From Saccostrea echinata (taxonomy: Eukaryota), in assembly GCF_033153115.1 (NCBI RefSeq), contig NW_026889776.1, positions 12,524,001 to 12,588,000 of the forward strand: a stretch of DNA of 64,000 nt. The letters are read 5' to 3'. The notes beneath the pieces were generated by a model. The model made no database searches and was not told the DNA's origin. It was given only the letters and a program-made list of their open reading frames with translations. A program made the position numbers and the translations under genes. Positions 55,381 to 62,223 of this stretch are shown piece after piece. Within the stretch, counting starts at the first letter, position 1. Every line of letters begins with the position of its first letter.

Positions 55381-55982
55381 AGCTATCGCGCAAGAATATA
55401 AAGCGTTATGCGTATTACATGCGATACGGTGTCGGCACTATTTCTCTTCTCTACTAATATCTCAATTCCATATATAAGACGTTTGGTCATCGTCACGGGC
55501 TGATGCACACTGACCTAAAAGGCCTAGTGTATACATTGATAGGTATGTCAAACCTGTACTGTCTATGGGGATTTCTATTTCATTCAAGTAATACAAAATG
55601 TAACACTAATCGTAAATCAGAAATGAGTAAAAATAATAATTAGTAAAAAATAAATAAAATCAGGATTGAGTAAATAATGTTTTGACACACACTAATAACT
55701 TACACGTTATTACAATCGAACTGCAGTGAGAGACACACATCGAACACTACGAAAGTGGACAATTTGTGGAGACAGTACAAGTTTGATGGATCCAACGGTA
55801 AGTAGAAATAAGCATAAAAACGATCAGAATAAAGTATCCAAATTCTTTGACGAAATACATCCAGAACACATTCACGCCCTTCCGACATGTTGACAAGTCA
55901 CTTGACAATCCAGTTTTGCTAAAAATAGATAACATAATTTCCATTTTCGTGCGCATGCCTCTCAAAAGGATCGGTTATTATT
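55381..55982 (+). repeat. Left terminal inverted repeat (602 bp)
   Basis: Reverse complement of 62027-62628. The only mismatches noticed are 2 nt near the inner end. The ORF track shows identical mirrored ORFs (55747-/62044+, 55700-/62121+). Confidence 0.95.
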
Positions 55983-58900
55983 TTTTTATTCATTGAATAT
56001 ATTCTATAATTCAAATACATCCTCCTGCTAATTATTTAAAGGTTTTGCAAGAAGTATTTAAAACAAAGAGAAAATGGTCTGTCTGTATTTTATGTTCTAC
56101 ACATTTTAACTAGTCTGTATGATATTCTGCAGAACTCCGGGGGGGGGGGGGGGGGGCGGCAGAATTATATATATTACATGAATGTGAGGGTGCATGTTTT
56201 CAGATGAATTCTTGCCTTTTTTTCATTCTTCAATGGGGTTAATAGGCAAAATGTAAGCCGGTATGTTTGAGGAAATTTCACTTATATATATATATATAAG
56301 CGTACAATTTAAACGTACAAAAATCAGATGTCGAAATAAAGTATAAGCTTGGACACCTGAATTTGTGTAGAATTTCAATCACTTTTATTTATAAAGGTTT
56401 CTGGGAACATGATGGAATCTGAGGAAGAGACTTCAGATACAGAGGTGATAATTTTTATTTTTTTATTTTTATTATTTTTTTTATGGTCTGCCCTCTGAAA
56501 AAGGATCTCTGTCAGAGTTTCAATTTCATTTATAAAAAAAAAAAAGAAGGCCACCAACCCTGAACCCCTTTGAAAAGATGTAAACTGATATAACTTTGTA
56601 GTCATTGTGTGTAGAAAAAAACAAAAGAAACAAACAAACAAAAATCATCCTGCATCTGATTGATTACAGTGTATGAATTCATCTATATTATAATCATTTC
56701 TTCGCCCTTTTCATGTACTATGATTTTTTTAAAAATCAATTTCTACAAAAAAGTAGCTTCTGTACTATCATTATTATATGAAGCGGGAAAATGGATTAAA
56801 TACTTTTTGGAACAATCCATGCACTTTATGCCTTATAAAGAATTTGTGTGAAATAAAAATATTCATATGTATGCATGTAGTCATTTTTTAAGGAAATAAA
56901 GGTTCAATATCTCTCAAATTATATTCTTTCATCGTTAATAACTCTATTATTCTCAATAAAAATATGCATGTAGGGATGTGAAAGTACAGTGGAAAAATTA
57001 CTACGAGAAATATTTGGTGACGATGATGCAAACGAGACCATGGATCCAGAAGATGTAGATACAGAGGGAGAAAACGACGCAGATGAAGCTATGTGGCACG
57101 AGTATGAGCCCTCTCTCTCTCTCTCTCTGCGCCACATAATCAAAAGCGCTTATAAAACCTTTATCTATATTTATATACGCTACATTACTCATTTATGTTT
57201 GAAGGAGAAACGAGCAAGACGAGGAAATCCATCTTGTAAAGGACAGGAGGTTTATCGTCGGCGAAAGGGAAATTCTCTACCTTATAGAAAGATCAACGTG
57301 TTCAGAGTGTGGAGAGCGCATTGATAATTCTACCATTCAGGAGGGGGAGAAGATTGCTGCTGGTATAAAATACCAGTACCTCTGCGTTGTATGTATACAA
57401 AAAAGGAAAAAAATCCAGGTTTCCAATCATTTTTGTGTGATATTTCCATTGATCAAAACATTTATATACGAGAGGTGTCTTATACGGAAGCGAAATAGTT
57501 CACTGACTAGCCTTATTCTGTAAAAAAGAAAATAAAATGCAATAGAATGAATTTTTTAAAAAGTAAATTGATTATTAGACATAACTACGTTTTGCATTGA
57601 CCAATTTGAGATCCGGACATATTATAAAAGAATTTAAAATGTATAAGATGATTATAAAAAAATACATGTACACTTTAAAAAAAACAATCCTGCTTCTATT
57701 TTACAAAGGATAAACAAAAGTAGAACAGAAGGGTTCATAAAAATAGCATTAGGTGGAGGAAAGTAAATTGAAGAATTTCTTTTATTCTTCTTTTATTGCA
57801 TGAATATACAAGACAGGAAAAGGGGTGGGGTATAAACTTACACTTATCTGATCATCTCAATGATTTTATACTAATTTTGGATGGAAGTTGATTTTATACA
57901 TTTTTGGAAAATAGAATTCCCACAAGAACAAATGGATTTCGACCCCTTTTTATGGTGGGAAGAGTCTGGTGGCGCTGCTAATACAATTGATGGTGCTGTT
58001 ATCTGGCGCGTCTTGGAGTAAGTTTGCCACAGGAGCGAAGTTTATAAACTTAGTAACAGGGTGTTCCCGTGCATTTTACCACCATCAACTTCTGTATAAG
58101 GTAATTTTTTTTTAAAATTTTCAATCAATAATATTTCCAATTAAAAAGGAAATTCAAAGTAGACAAACTAGATATTACTCTCTTTGCAGGAGGCAATAAA
58201 CAGTTTTTTTGAAAAACATCTGACTAATGTGCATAAAAAATTAGCAGGCAAGCCATTGAGCCTAGCAGTTGACGTCCGATATGACTCACCAGGTACAGGA
58301 GATATTTACTCTAATAGCTAAATGAATGTCAGGTTTTAGATATACTGAATAAACAGTAATCTCTTATTTAAAAAAATAGTGATTTTTTATACAAGTATGT
58401 TACAGCTTTTTCAAATAGTAAGGGGGGGGGTTGAGAAAAAACTGAAAAATTTTGACAATAGAGAAATGAAAGAAAAATGAAGGGAACAGTCCCCACCCAC
58501 CTACTGGTGCTACTAGGATCATGCGCGGATCCAGGATTTTTTTCCAGGGGGGGGGGGGGATTCCACCCCAGTCAAAAAAATCCAACCCAGAAATTTGTTG
58601 ACAAGCAAAAAAAAAAATGTAAACTCGCCGCCCAAACGTGAAAAACCTATATTTCTTGAGGGGGGGGGGGGGGGGGGTTAGTGGTTGACTTCTTACATTT
58701 GACTTTTCGTACCAACTTGACACAGGTCCGCGTTTTCGAGGGGGGTCTGCGTTTTCTTAGGGGGGTCCAAGGTCTCTTTTTACTTGGTTTAGTATATAAA
58801 TTTAATAACTCTGCAAATTCCAGGGGGTCCGGACCCCCCCCCCCTCTAGATCCGCGCATGAGGATATGTCTGTCATGACAGCAGTAAAAGTCGTGAATTG

Positions 58901-61390: not shown

Positions 61391-61427
<37 letters not shown>

Positions 61428-62223
61428 CAAACAGCTTATTTTGTAAAAACTTATTTCTCTTAAATACACGTATATATCAGGTCATGCATTTATAATTACC
61501 ATTTAAATTATTGGGTGTTTTTTGTTTTTTGTTTTTGTTTTTTGTATGAAGAAAAACGGTATGTACATGTTTTGTGCTGTAGGTTTCTGTCAAACATTAG
61601 TTATTATGGATTTTGTACGGCGTTATTTTCGTACATATATGGAAGAAATATTTTACATGTGTAATAACAGTACAAGTTGTACATATTTGTTGGAAACTTT
61701 TTGATGTTTGTACTATCTAATTATTTTAATGAAGAAAAGCTTTATTTTGATCAAGAAAAATACAACTTCAATATACGTGTACATATGTGTTTTGTCCTTT
61801 TTCATATTAGTTAGGAAAAAAGGAGGCCTACAAATATTTTTCTATAACCTCCAATATTTTTTTTTACTCAATTTTTCTTCACATCTGTAGCTAACAGGAT
61901 CTGGGTAAAAATCGATTACAATTACATGAGTAACATTTAAAACCACACCTTACAATGCGGTGAATCCCGCTTTTATATATTATTACTTTTTTTCAAAGAT
62001 AAAATGCAATCATCAGAAAAATTGTCAATAATAACCGATCCCATTGAGAGGCATGCGCACGAAAATGGAAATTATGTTATCTATTTTTAGCAAAACTGGA
62101 TTGTCAAGTGACTTGTCAACATGTCGGAAGGGCGTGAATGTGTTCTGGATGTATTTCGTCAAAGAATTTGGATACTTTATTCTGATCGTTTTTATGCTTA
62201 TTTCTACTTACCGTTGGATCCAT
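60496..62223 (-). CDS. KolX-like protein (about 255 aa): N-terminal 9-Cys CXC-like cluster plus a C-terminal domain resembling the P2X7 cytoplasmic ballast / Nanor Cys-rich domain
   Basis: Phase-0 exons 62223-62212 (MDPT), 61355-61095 (INCCACQNRGQCKSCVCRRRGCTNCRNANC...AVSLQ) and 60990-60496 (..[53 protein letters not shown]..YKGY). Confidence 0.8.
61394..61424. repeat. (GA)n microsatellite in KolX intron 1
   Basis: Pure GA run. Confidence 0.9.

What the first reader, a model, noticed from the sequence alone, without database searches (positions are those of the whole stretch)
55786..62223. Both genes of the Kolobok element appear to start from one shared first coding exon encoded in the TIRs
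Seen: each 602-bp TIR contains ATG GAT CCA ACG|GTAAGT (M-D-P-T plus a perfect phase-0 splice donor) pointing inward, at 55786-55797 (+) and 62223-62212 (-). The next KolX exon (61355-61095) begins after a good acceptor (TTTCATAG), is phase 0, and has no ATG before its Cys cluster, so it needs an upstream phase-0 start exon. The next transposase exons (56397 and 56974) are also phase 0. Inference: the long TIR doubles as a promoter, 5'UTR and start-exon cassette, so both proteins have identical promoters and N-termini and are obligately co-regulated. This could explain why the TIRs are so long. I do not know of this arrangement being described, but could not check the literature.
Basis: partly seen in the sequence, partly recalled or inferred. 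Interest (0 to 1): 0.9.

Follow-up and report, generated by a model that had tools for sequence, protein, structure and literature searches.

The report
Transposon end repeats carry shared start exon
A young oyster DNA transposon has 602-base inverted ends that each hold a four-codon start exon and splice donor; its accessory gene almost certainly starts there, its transposase only probably, so this extends the maize MuDR arrangement rather than being a new principle.

Summary
The element is window 55381-62628, with TTAA duplications, 602-bp TIRs and AG..CT ends. It is a Kol0-type Kolobok of Saccostrea echinata. Each TIR carries ATG + 3 codons + GTAAGT pointing inward.

For KolX the reading is well supported:
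- Two RefSeq models (255 aa) are exactly MDPT + exon 61355-61095 + exon 60990-60499.
- The conserved Cys-cluster exon has an in-frame stop at its acceptor and no ATG of its own.
- A sister family with TIRs of only about 12 bp has the same layout: a 4-codon start exon (MASN) + GTAAGA, 263-274 bp from the end. That start also appears in Magallana gigas proteins and on a 1,093-nt assembled contig that should be spliced cDNA.

For the transposase the reading is plausible but unproven:
- It has its own ATG (56409), where homologues start.
- No database model uses MDPT.
- The exon-2 acceptor position is conserved across families, and the TIR donor is the strongest upstream donor. Splicing to it would add 8 in-frame residues.

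No read data could be obtained. TIR promoters serving two convergent genes are already known from MuDR. The new part is that the TIR also holds the start codon and donor. Another copy of this family was noted earlier in this scan (s1-803040).

The parts
55377..55380 (.). Left TTAA target-site duplication
   Evidence: all family copies are flanked by TTAA, with different outer flanks.
55381..55982 (+). Left 602-bp TIR. The terminus begins AG. It is inferred to hold the promoter, leader, start exon, donor and the first 185 bp of intron 1.
55786..55797 (+). Left copy of the 4-codon start exon (MDPT). Donor GTAAGT at 55798-55803.
   Evidence: It is the strongest donor in the 1,016 bp upstream of transposase exon 2. 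Its use by the transposase is inferred, not shown.
56397..56444 (+). Transposase exon 2 (16 codons). The transposase's own ATG codons are at 56409 and 56412.
   Evidence: The acceptor is kept in 10/10 copies. The same acceptor position appears in family B and in M. gigas models.
56974..57101 (+). Transposase exon 3
   Evidence: mapped with P0034.
57205..57388 (+). Transposase exon 4 (zinc-ribbon-like CxxC region)
57915..58100 (+). Transposase exon 5
58190..58292 (+). Transposase exon 6
58909..59124 (+). Transposase exon 7
59231..59477 (+). Transposase exon 8
59572..59649 (+). Transposase exon 9
   Evidence: and reading. The script picked a wrong acceptor here; I corrected it by hand against P0221.
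59767..60074 (+). Transposase exon 10
60313..60485 (+). Transposase exon 11 with stop (60483-60485). An alternative donor lies after 60477.
61136..61161 (+). Alternative last transposase exon (8 codons + stop). It lies antisense inside KolX exon 2.
   Evidence: The C-termini of RefSeq P0033 and of S. cucullata P0034 match this stretch as read.
60496..60990 (-). KolX exon 3 with stop; P2X7 ballast-type domain
   Evidence: Pfam P2RX7_C: 4e-18, 1.4e-18. P0001 is 100% identical.
61095..61355 (-). KolX exon 2 (Cys cluster). Phase 0 at both ends, no own ATG before the cluster.
62212..62223 (-). Right copy of the 4-codon start exon (MDPT), used by KolX. Donor at 62211-62206.
62027..62628 (-). Right 602-bp TIR
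62629..62632 (.). Right TTAA target-site duplication

Best explanation
This is a recently active two-gene Kolobok transposon of the Kol0 lineage in Saccostrea echinata. The transposase reads rightwards and KolX leftwards, and their stop codons lie 10 bp apart.

The terminal 602 bp are the same at both ends. This block contains, reading inward:
- about 400 bp that must hold the promoter and leader (inferred);
- a 12-nt start exon (ATG + 3 codons);
- a consensus GTAAGT donor;
- the first 185 bp of intron 1.

KolX (about 0.9): the right-hand copy supplies the only available start codon. It is spliced over an 856-bp intron to the Cys-cluster exon.

Transposase (about 0.55): the left-hand copy most likely acts as the leader exon, spliced over a 599-bp intron to exon 2 at 56397. 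The TIR ATG is in frame there, 8 codons upstream of the transposase's own ATG at 56409. That ancestral ATG has the better initiation context (A at -3, against T at -3 for the TIR ATG).

Origin (inferred): the KolX-side end, whose micro-exon is ancestral, was copied onto the transposase end by TIR extension. It replaced a non-coding leader exon. An in-frame junction is what made this tolerable.

Consequence: both genes would share a promoter and leader and be co-regulated, as in MuDR.
For: Element and family
- TTAA duplications, AG..CT ends and at least 8 independent two-TIR copies.
- KolX exon 3 matches Pfam P2RX7_C. The Kol0 lineage is defined as transposase + KolX in PMC9587614.

KolX
- RefSeq XP_061185203.1 at this very locus (P0001) and XP_061169579.1 (P0226) equal MDPT + the two exons.
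- There is an in-frame stop at the exon-2 acceptor.
- The Cys cluster is conserved in homologues.
- MDPT|GTAAGT is the best of 15 phase-0 ATG/donor candidates.
- Family B (L059, 8,272 bp, about 12-bp TIRs) has ATG + 3 codons + GTAAGA at 263-274 bp from its KolX-side end, followed by a 1.34-kb intron.
- M. gigas proteins start with the same MASN. One of them (P0239, 251 aa) sits on a 1,093-nt contig, too short to hold the introns.

Transposase
- The left TIR is 99.7% identical to the right one, so it has the same promoter and donor.
- Exon 2 begins 12 nt before the ATG in families A and B.
- M. gigas models join different upstream exons at the same point.
- The acceptor is kept in 10/10 copies.
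- The TIR donor is the strongest in the 1,016 bp upstream.
- Both possible junctions are in frame.

Conservation: ATG is kept in 18/19 and GTAAGT in 19/19 family TIRs, down to 92% identity.
Against: - No junction and no transcription start is therefore observed in this species.
- RefSeq models may be partly ab initio.
- No database protein joins MDPT to transposase exons. The S. cucullata orthologue starts at the exon-2 ATG, and S. echinata models start further downstream.
- The exon-2 acceptor is AAG|G, a weak type.
- Three 7/9 donors (56183, 56252, 56260) lie in the unique 414 bp, so a transposase-specific leader is possible.
- In family B the putative transposase leader exon has no in-frame ATG. 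A shared N-terminus is therefore not a lineage feature.
- The copies are young, so conservation of the motif says little.
- The only 77%-identity relative has lost both the ATG and the GT. It is, however, one decayed copy that was later duplicated.
- No protein with 90% or more identity to either gene comes from an assembled sequencing run, so expression may be low.
Confidence: 0.6

Rival explanations
1. Only KolX uses the TIR exon. The transposase is transcribed from its own promoter or leader in the unique 414 bp between the left TIR and exon 2, or begins just upstream of exon 2, and is translated from ATG 56409. The left copy of the start exon is then a passive by-product of the inverted repeat.
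For: - The transposase has its own ATG where homologues begin.
- No model uses MDPT.
- Donors scoring 7/9 lie at 56183, 56252 and 56260, and a TA-rich stretch at about 56285-56302 lies in the unique region.
- The in-frame fit has roughly a one-in-three chance.
- Family B keeps separate, unrelated ends for the two genes.
Against: - If the right TIR is a working promoter with a consensus donor, the near-identical left TIR should fire and splice too.
- The acceptor 12 nt before the ATG is conserved across families, which argues for an upstream exon.
- The TIR donor is the strongest available.
Confidence: 0.33
2. The ATG + GTAAGT in the TIR is a chance motif picked up by gene prediction. KolX would then be made from the internal ATG 61157 without the Cys cluster, or from some other first exon.
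For: - RefSeq models can be ab initio.
- Some annotated homologues (P0003, P0004, P0008) begin after the Cys cluster.
- The motif is short.
Against: - The Cys-cluster exon is conserved as coding sequence between families and species.
- The same 4-codon start exon + donor near the element end is present in family B. It appears in M. gigas proteins and on a short assembled contig.
- It is the best candidate of 15.
- The pattern is rare.
Confidence: 0.05
3. The 602-bp length of the TIR is not selected for co-regulation. It results from neutral TIR extension (recombination or repair copying one end onto the other), survived because the junction happened to stay in frame, and is kept alike by descent and conversion.
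For: - The sister family works with TIRs of about 12 bp.
- The TIR boundary falls inside intron 1, at no functional landmark.
- Galileo recruits internal and even coding sequence into its TIRs (PMC4168063).
- Many copies carry left/right TIR differences that are inherited, at 94-99.7% identity within pairs.
Against: This does not contradict the use of the exon. It only contradicts the adaptive reading. The long-TIR family has been successful, with at least 8 recent insertions.
Confidence: 0.5

Closest known systems
MuDR (maize Mutator) with mudrA and mudrB
   Same: Two convergently transcribed genes. The promoters and transcription start sites of both lie in the TIRs. Antisense overlap arises where the genes meet (PMC3440606).
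   Different: It belongs to a different superfamily, with TIRs of about 215 bp. The start sites lie at about +165 or just inside, so neither a start codon nor a splice donor is reported in the TIR. Here the TIR extends past a coding start exon and its donor into intron 1, and the target site is TTAA.
Kol0 lineage of Kolobok (Kolobok-1_XT type), transposase + KolX
   Same: TTAA target site, 5'-RR / YY-3' ends, and a second protein (KolX) with the P2X7 ballast fold (PMC9587614; Pfam).
   Different: That paper mentions no promoter, first exon or long TIR for Kol0. The long TIR with a start exon is a feature of this family.
Family B Kol0 element of the same genome (L059 1472-9743)
   Same: The same two convergent genes. 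The KolX start is a 4-codon micro-exon + GTAAGA near the element end, followed by a long first intron. Transposase exon 2 begins 12 nt before its ATG.
   Different: Its TIRs are only about 12 bp, so the micro-exon exists on the KolX side alone. The putative transposase leader exon is unrelated and has no in-frame ATG.
Galileo (P superfamily) TIR extension
   Same: Long, dynamic TIRs that recruit internal sequence, including a piece of the ORF (PMC4168063).
   Different: The recruited piece there is the 3' end of the ORF, with no proposed function. Galileo has a single gene.
Retroviral LTR with leader and major splice donor (own knowledge, not tested here)
   Same: One promoter-leader-donor unit serves several reading frames.
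   Different: A retrovirus uses one copy through alternative splicing on one strand. Here two inverted copies would serve two genes on opposite strands.

Membership tests
Kolobok superfamily | TTAA target-site duplication | tested here: met
   15 of 18 family TIR ends examined abut TTAA, with different outer flanks; the other three (L016, L018, L019) read TAAAA, TTCA and TTAG. This copy has TTAA at 55377-55380 and 62629-62632.
Kolobok superfamily | Termini 5'-RR ... YY-3' (PMC9587614) | tested here: met
   The element begins AG and ends CT. Family B does the same.
Kolobok superfamily | DDD/E transposase related to named Kolobok transposases | tested here: inconclusive
   No Pfam family passes threshold. 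Relatives give only a weak sub-threshold Mutator-like hit (PF20700). Homologues in databases are unnamed. No Repbase comparison was possible.
Kol0 lineage of Kolobok | Second gene KolX with the P2X7 cytoplasmic ballast fold | tested here: met
   Pfam P2RX7_C at 4e-18 and 1.4e-18. Lineage definition in PMC9587614.
MuDR-type arrangement (TIR promoters for two convergent genes) | Two convergent genes between the TIRs | tested here: met
   Transposase on +, KolX on -, with stops at 60483-60485 and 60498-60496.
MuDR-type arrangement (TIR promoters for two convergent genes) | Transcription of both genes starts inside the TIRs | not testable with these tools
   No reads could be obtained. For KolX it follows from the exon position, provided the element carries its own promoter.
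Mutator superfamily (true membership with MuDR) | Mutator-type transposase and 9-bp target duplication (own knowledge) | tested here: not met
   The target duplication is TTAA. The element works like MuDR in layout but is not a member.

The most novel reading that the evidence does not exclude
The long TIR is a duplicated expression cassette of promoter, leader, start codon and splice donor. It was born when the KolX 5' end was copied onto the transposase end. Both mRNAs would then begin with the same exon, and both proteins with the same four residues, tying transposase and KolX output to one regulatory sequence. Silencing or activating one TIR sequence would then switch both genes. This would be the first DNA transposon reported with a coding exon shared through its inverted repeats.
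Probability: 0.5. Interest if true: 0.65.

Novelty: new variant of a known kind. Interest (0 to 1): 0.5.

Why it matters
If RNA data confirm both junctions, this family shows that a TIR can be a complete 5' gene module used twice, not only a transposase-binding site and promoter. That would give a concrete route by which TIR extension rewires transposon gene regulation. It would also be a natural case of enforced co-expression of a transposase and its accessory protein. The function of KolX, the ancestor of the P2X7 ballast domain, is unknown, and tight coupling to the transposase would be a clue. In practice, gene-finders and repeat curators should expect KolX start codons in tiny exons near Kolobok ends. 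Many annotated KolX proteins probably lack their true N-terminus.

Tried and rejected
- More families. The 3-kb loci already held were too short or too decayed to show first exons or ends.
- The 77% relatives (L020/L021) lack both the ATG and the GT. They share flanks, so they are one old insertion that was later duplicated. Their KolX has stops, and the transposase end is missing. This is weak evidence either way, and the direction of TIR copying could not be read from them.
- Local alignment of the TIR against both ends of family B gave nothing above shuffled controls. The similarity between the two micro-exons (ATGG, a shared 6-mer, GTAAG) is suggestive only.
- A search with the Cys-cluster exon alone found nothing, because of the length limits of that tool.
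- A 17-nt inverted repeat in the TIR next to the ATG shows no supporting covariation.
- Literature searches for a coding exon shared through TIRs found no case.
- Spliced models were never joined for a search. Exons were searched one by one by reference, and existing database proteins were mapped back to the window.
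Full report
**What is there**

The window holds a 7,248-bp element (55381-62628). It is bounded by TTAA on both sides and has 602-bp terminal inverted repeats that differ at only two adjacent positions. The ends read AG...CT. The genome is Saccostrea echinata: the encoded proteins are 100% identical to RefSeq proteins of that species.

A search of the whole assembly (923 Mb) with one TIR gives at least eight two-TIR copies plus some partial ones, at 92-100% identity. 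Nearly all TIR ends examined abut TTAA, and the outer flanks differ. These are independent and mostly recent insertions. TIR pairs within one element are 94.0-99.7% identical.

**The two genes**

On the minus strand, exon 60990-60496 matches Pfam P2RX7_C (4e-18). Exon 61355-61095 encodes a Cys cluster. This is KolX, the accessory protein that defines the Kol0 lineage of Kolobok and has the P2X7 ballast fold (PMC9587614).

On the plus strand I mapped RefSeq and related proteins back to the window and obtained an eleven-exon transposase:
- the TIR exon, ending at 55797
- 56397-56444
- 56974-57101
- 57205-57388
- 57915-58100
- 58190-58292
- 58909-59124
- 59231-59477
- 59572-59649
- 59767-60074
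- 60313-60482, with the stop at 60483-60485

The reading frame is open throughout. It gives 560 codons from the TIR ATG, or 552 from ATG 56409. Homologues are 551-597 aa. The two stop codons are 10 bp apart, so the genes converge tail to tail.

Spliced models were not joined for any search. Exons were searched separately by reference.

**The observation**

ATG + three codons + GTAAGT stands at 55786-55803 (+) and 62223-62206 (-). KolX exon 2 follows a good acceptor. It has an in-frame TAG directly upstream and no ATG before the Cys cluster. Transposase exons at 56397 and 56974 are phase 0. The exact pattern ATG-N9-GTAAGT occurs 5 times in the window against 0.64 expected. All points of the observation are confirmed.

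**KolX side**

Two RefSeq proteins of 255 aa are exactly MDPT + exon 2 + exon 3: XP_061185203.1 at this locus and XP_061169579.1 at another copy.

Among all 15 phase-0 ATG/donor combinations between exon 2 and the element end, the TIR one is the best, matching 8 of 9 consensus positions. The Cys cluster is conserved in homologues from Magallana gigas and in other S. echinata families. It is therefore coding and needs an upstream start.

The strongest support is comparative. A second Kol0 family in the same genome (L059 1472-9743; 8,272 bp; TTAA; AG ends) has TIRs of only about 12 bp. It carries ATG + three codons + GTAAGA at 263-274 bp from its KolX-side end, followed by a 1.34-kb intron up to the Cys exon. 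The peptide of that exon, MASN, is the N-terminus of M. gigas KolX proteins. One such 251-aa protein sits on a 1,093-nt assembled contig, which cannot hold the introns and so should be spliced cDNA.

A four-codon start exon near the element end is therefore an ancestral feature of these KolX genes. I put the use of the right-TIR exon by KolX at about 0.9.

**Transposase side**

Here the evidence is indirect.
- Exon 2 has its own ATG codons (56409, 56412), just where the S. cucullata orthologue (89% identical) and other oyster homologues begin.
- All five S. echinata RefSeq models of this family start at internal methionines.
- No database protein joins MDPT to transposase sequence.
- The transposase therefore does not need the TIR ATG.

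In favour:
- Exon 2 begins 12 nt before the ATG in both family A and family B.
- M. gigas models join different upstream exons at the same point, just before residues VS.
- The acceptor is intact in 10 of 10 copies. An upstream leader exon therefore seems to be the rule in this clade.
- In family A, the strongest donor in the 1,016 bp upstream is the TIR donor. Three weaker ones lie in the unique 414 bp.
- If the right TIR drives KolX, the near-identical left TIR should also fire inward and offer its donor.

The junction to 56397, and also to 56974, is in frame. The TIR ATG would then add eight residues. It has T at -3, while ATG 56409 has A at -3, so leaky scanning to the ancestral ATG is likely (inference).

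In family B the putative transposase leader exon has stops in frame. A shared N-terminus is therefore peculiar to family A and probably of little functional weight. The shared promoter, leader and donor would be what matters. I put transposase use of the TIR exon at about 0.55.

**Origin**

The micro-exon is ancestral on the KolX side, and the transposase has its own ATG. The simplest history is that the KolX-side end was copied onto the transposase end and replaced a non-coding leader. The TIR boundary lies inside intron 1 of both genes, at no functional landmark.

Extension of TIRs by recruiting internal sequence is known from Galileo (PMC4168063). The length may therefore be a neutral outcome that survived because the junction stayed in frame. 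The direction could not be tested. The only diverged relative (77% identity) is one decayed copy, later duplicated, which lacks its transposase end. It has lost both the ATG and the GT.

**Comparison with what is known**

MuDR of maize has two convergent genes whose promoters and start sites lie in its TIRs of about 215 bp, with antisense overlap between the genes (PMC3440606). The idea that a TIR doubles as the promoter for both genes is thus known.

What is new here is that the repeat reaches past a coding start exon and its splice donor. Full-text searches found no description of that. The Kolobok paper mentions no promoter or first exon for Kol0.

The element meets the Kolobok criteria of TTAA, RR/YY ends and KolX. 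The transposase itself has no named family hit.

**Limits**

- RefSeq models may be partly ab initio.
- No protein 90% or more identical to either gene comes from an assembled run, so expression may be low.

**Verdict**

This is a new variant of a known arrangement, of moderate interest, and a single RNA mapping or RT-PCR experiment would decide it.

Noticed in passing
window 60477-61161 (+), against KolX exons on (-): RefSeq P0033 and S. cucullata P0034 end in a tiny extra exon. In this copy it is 61136-61161, reached from a GTAAGT donor after 60477. The transposase transcript would then run antisense through KolX exon 3 and into exon 2. The two stop codons are only 10 bp apart. Convergent overlapping transcripts could give double-stranded RNA.
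   Followed up: partly
window 58519-58861: An unrelated foldback MITE of about 340 bp, with 16-nt inverted ends and long G/C runs, sits in transposase intron 6. It has more than 3,000 first-look candidates in the genome and is present in all full copies of this family. It therefore entered the master copy before amplification.
   Followed up: partly
window 55548-55564 and 55770-55786 (and mirror positions in the right TIR): A 17-nt inverted repeat (16/17) within the TIR. Its second arm ends on the A of the start ATG. It could pair in a long leader RNA. The decayed relative gives no covariation support.
   Followed up: partly
L059 1472-9743 (G000:C29:31140471-31148742); also L058, L060: A second Kol0 family of 8,272 bp with TTAA, AGCT... 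ends and TIRs of only about 12 bp. It has at least three copies at 93-98% identity. RefSeq transposase P0183 (569 aa) maps to it.
   Followed up: yes
L062/L063 (G000:C33:21804000-21813999 and C81:1265500-1275499): An old relative of this family (77% identity in the TIR) lies in a segment duplicated between two contigs, flanks included. It is riddled with MITE insertions. Its KolX exons 2 and 3 are contiguous, without the 104-bp intron.
   Followed up: partly
L012 (C25:3527320-3527930) and L014 (C35:1378305-1378918): Two transposase-side TIR ends have the same outer flank. They are probably the same insertion assembled twice (haplotig) or a segmental duplicate.
   Followed up: no
RefSeq P0224 (LOC133193260, this locus): The annotated transposase product of this very copy is a 176-aa protein. 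It starts at a methionine in exon 7, skips exon 10 and reads exon 11 out of frame. This looks like a mis-spliced or partial transcript model, not the real transposase.
   Followed up: partly
window 55786-55803 versus L059 KolX-side micro-exon: The two start micro-exons (MDPT and MASN) are both 12 nt. They share ATGG, a 6-mer offset by one base, and GTAAG, while the surrounding non-coding DNA does not align. This may indicate homology with compensating one-base indels.
   Followed up: partly
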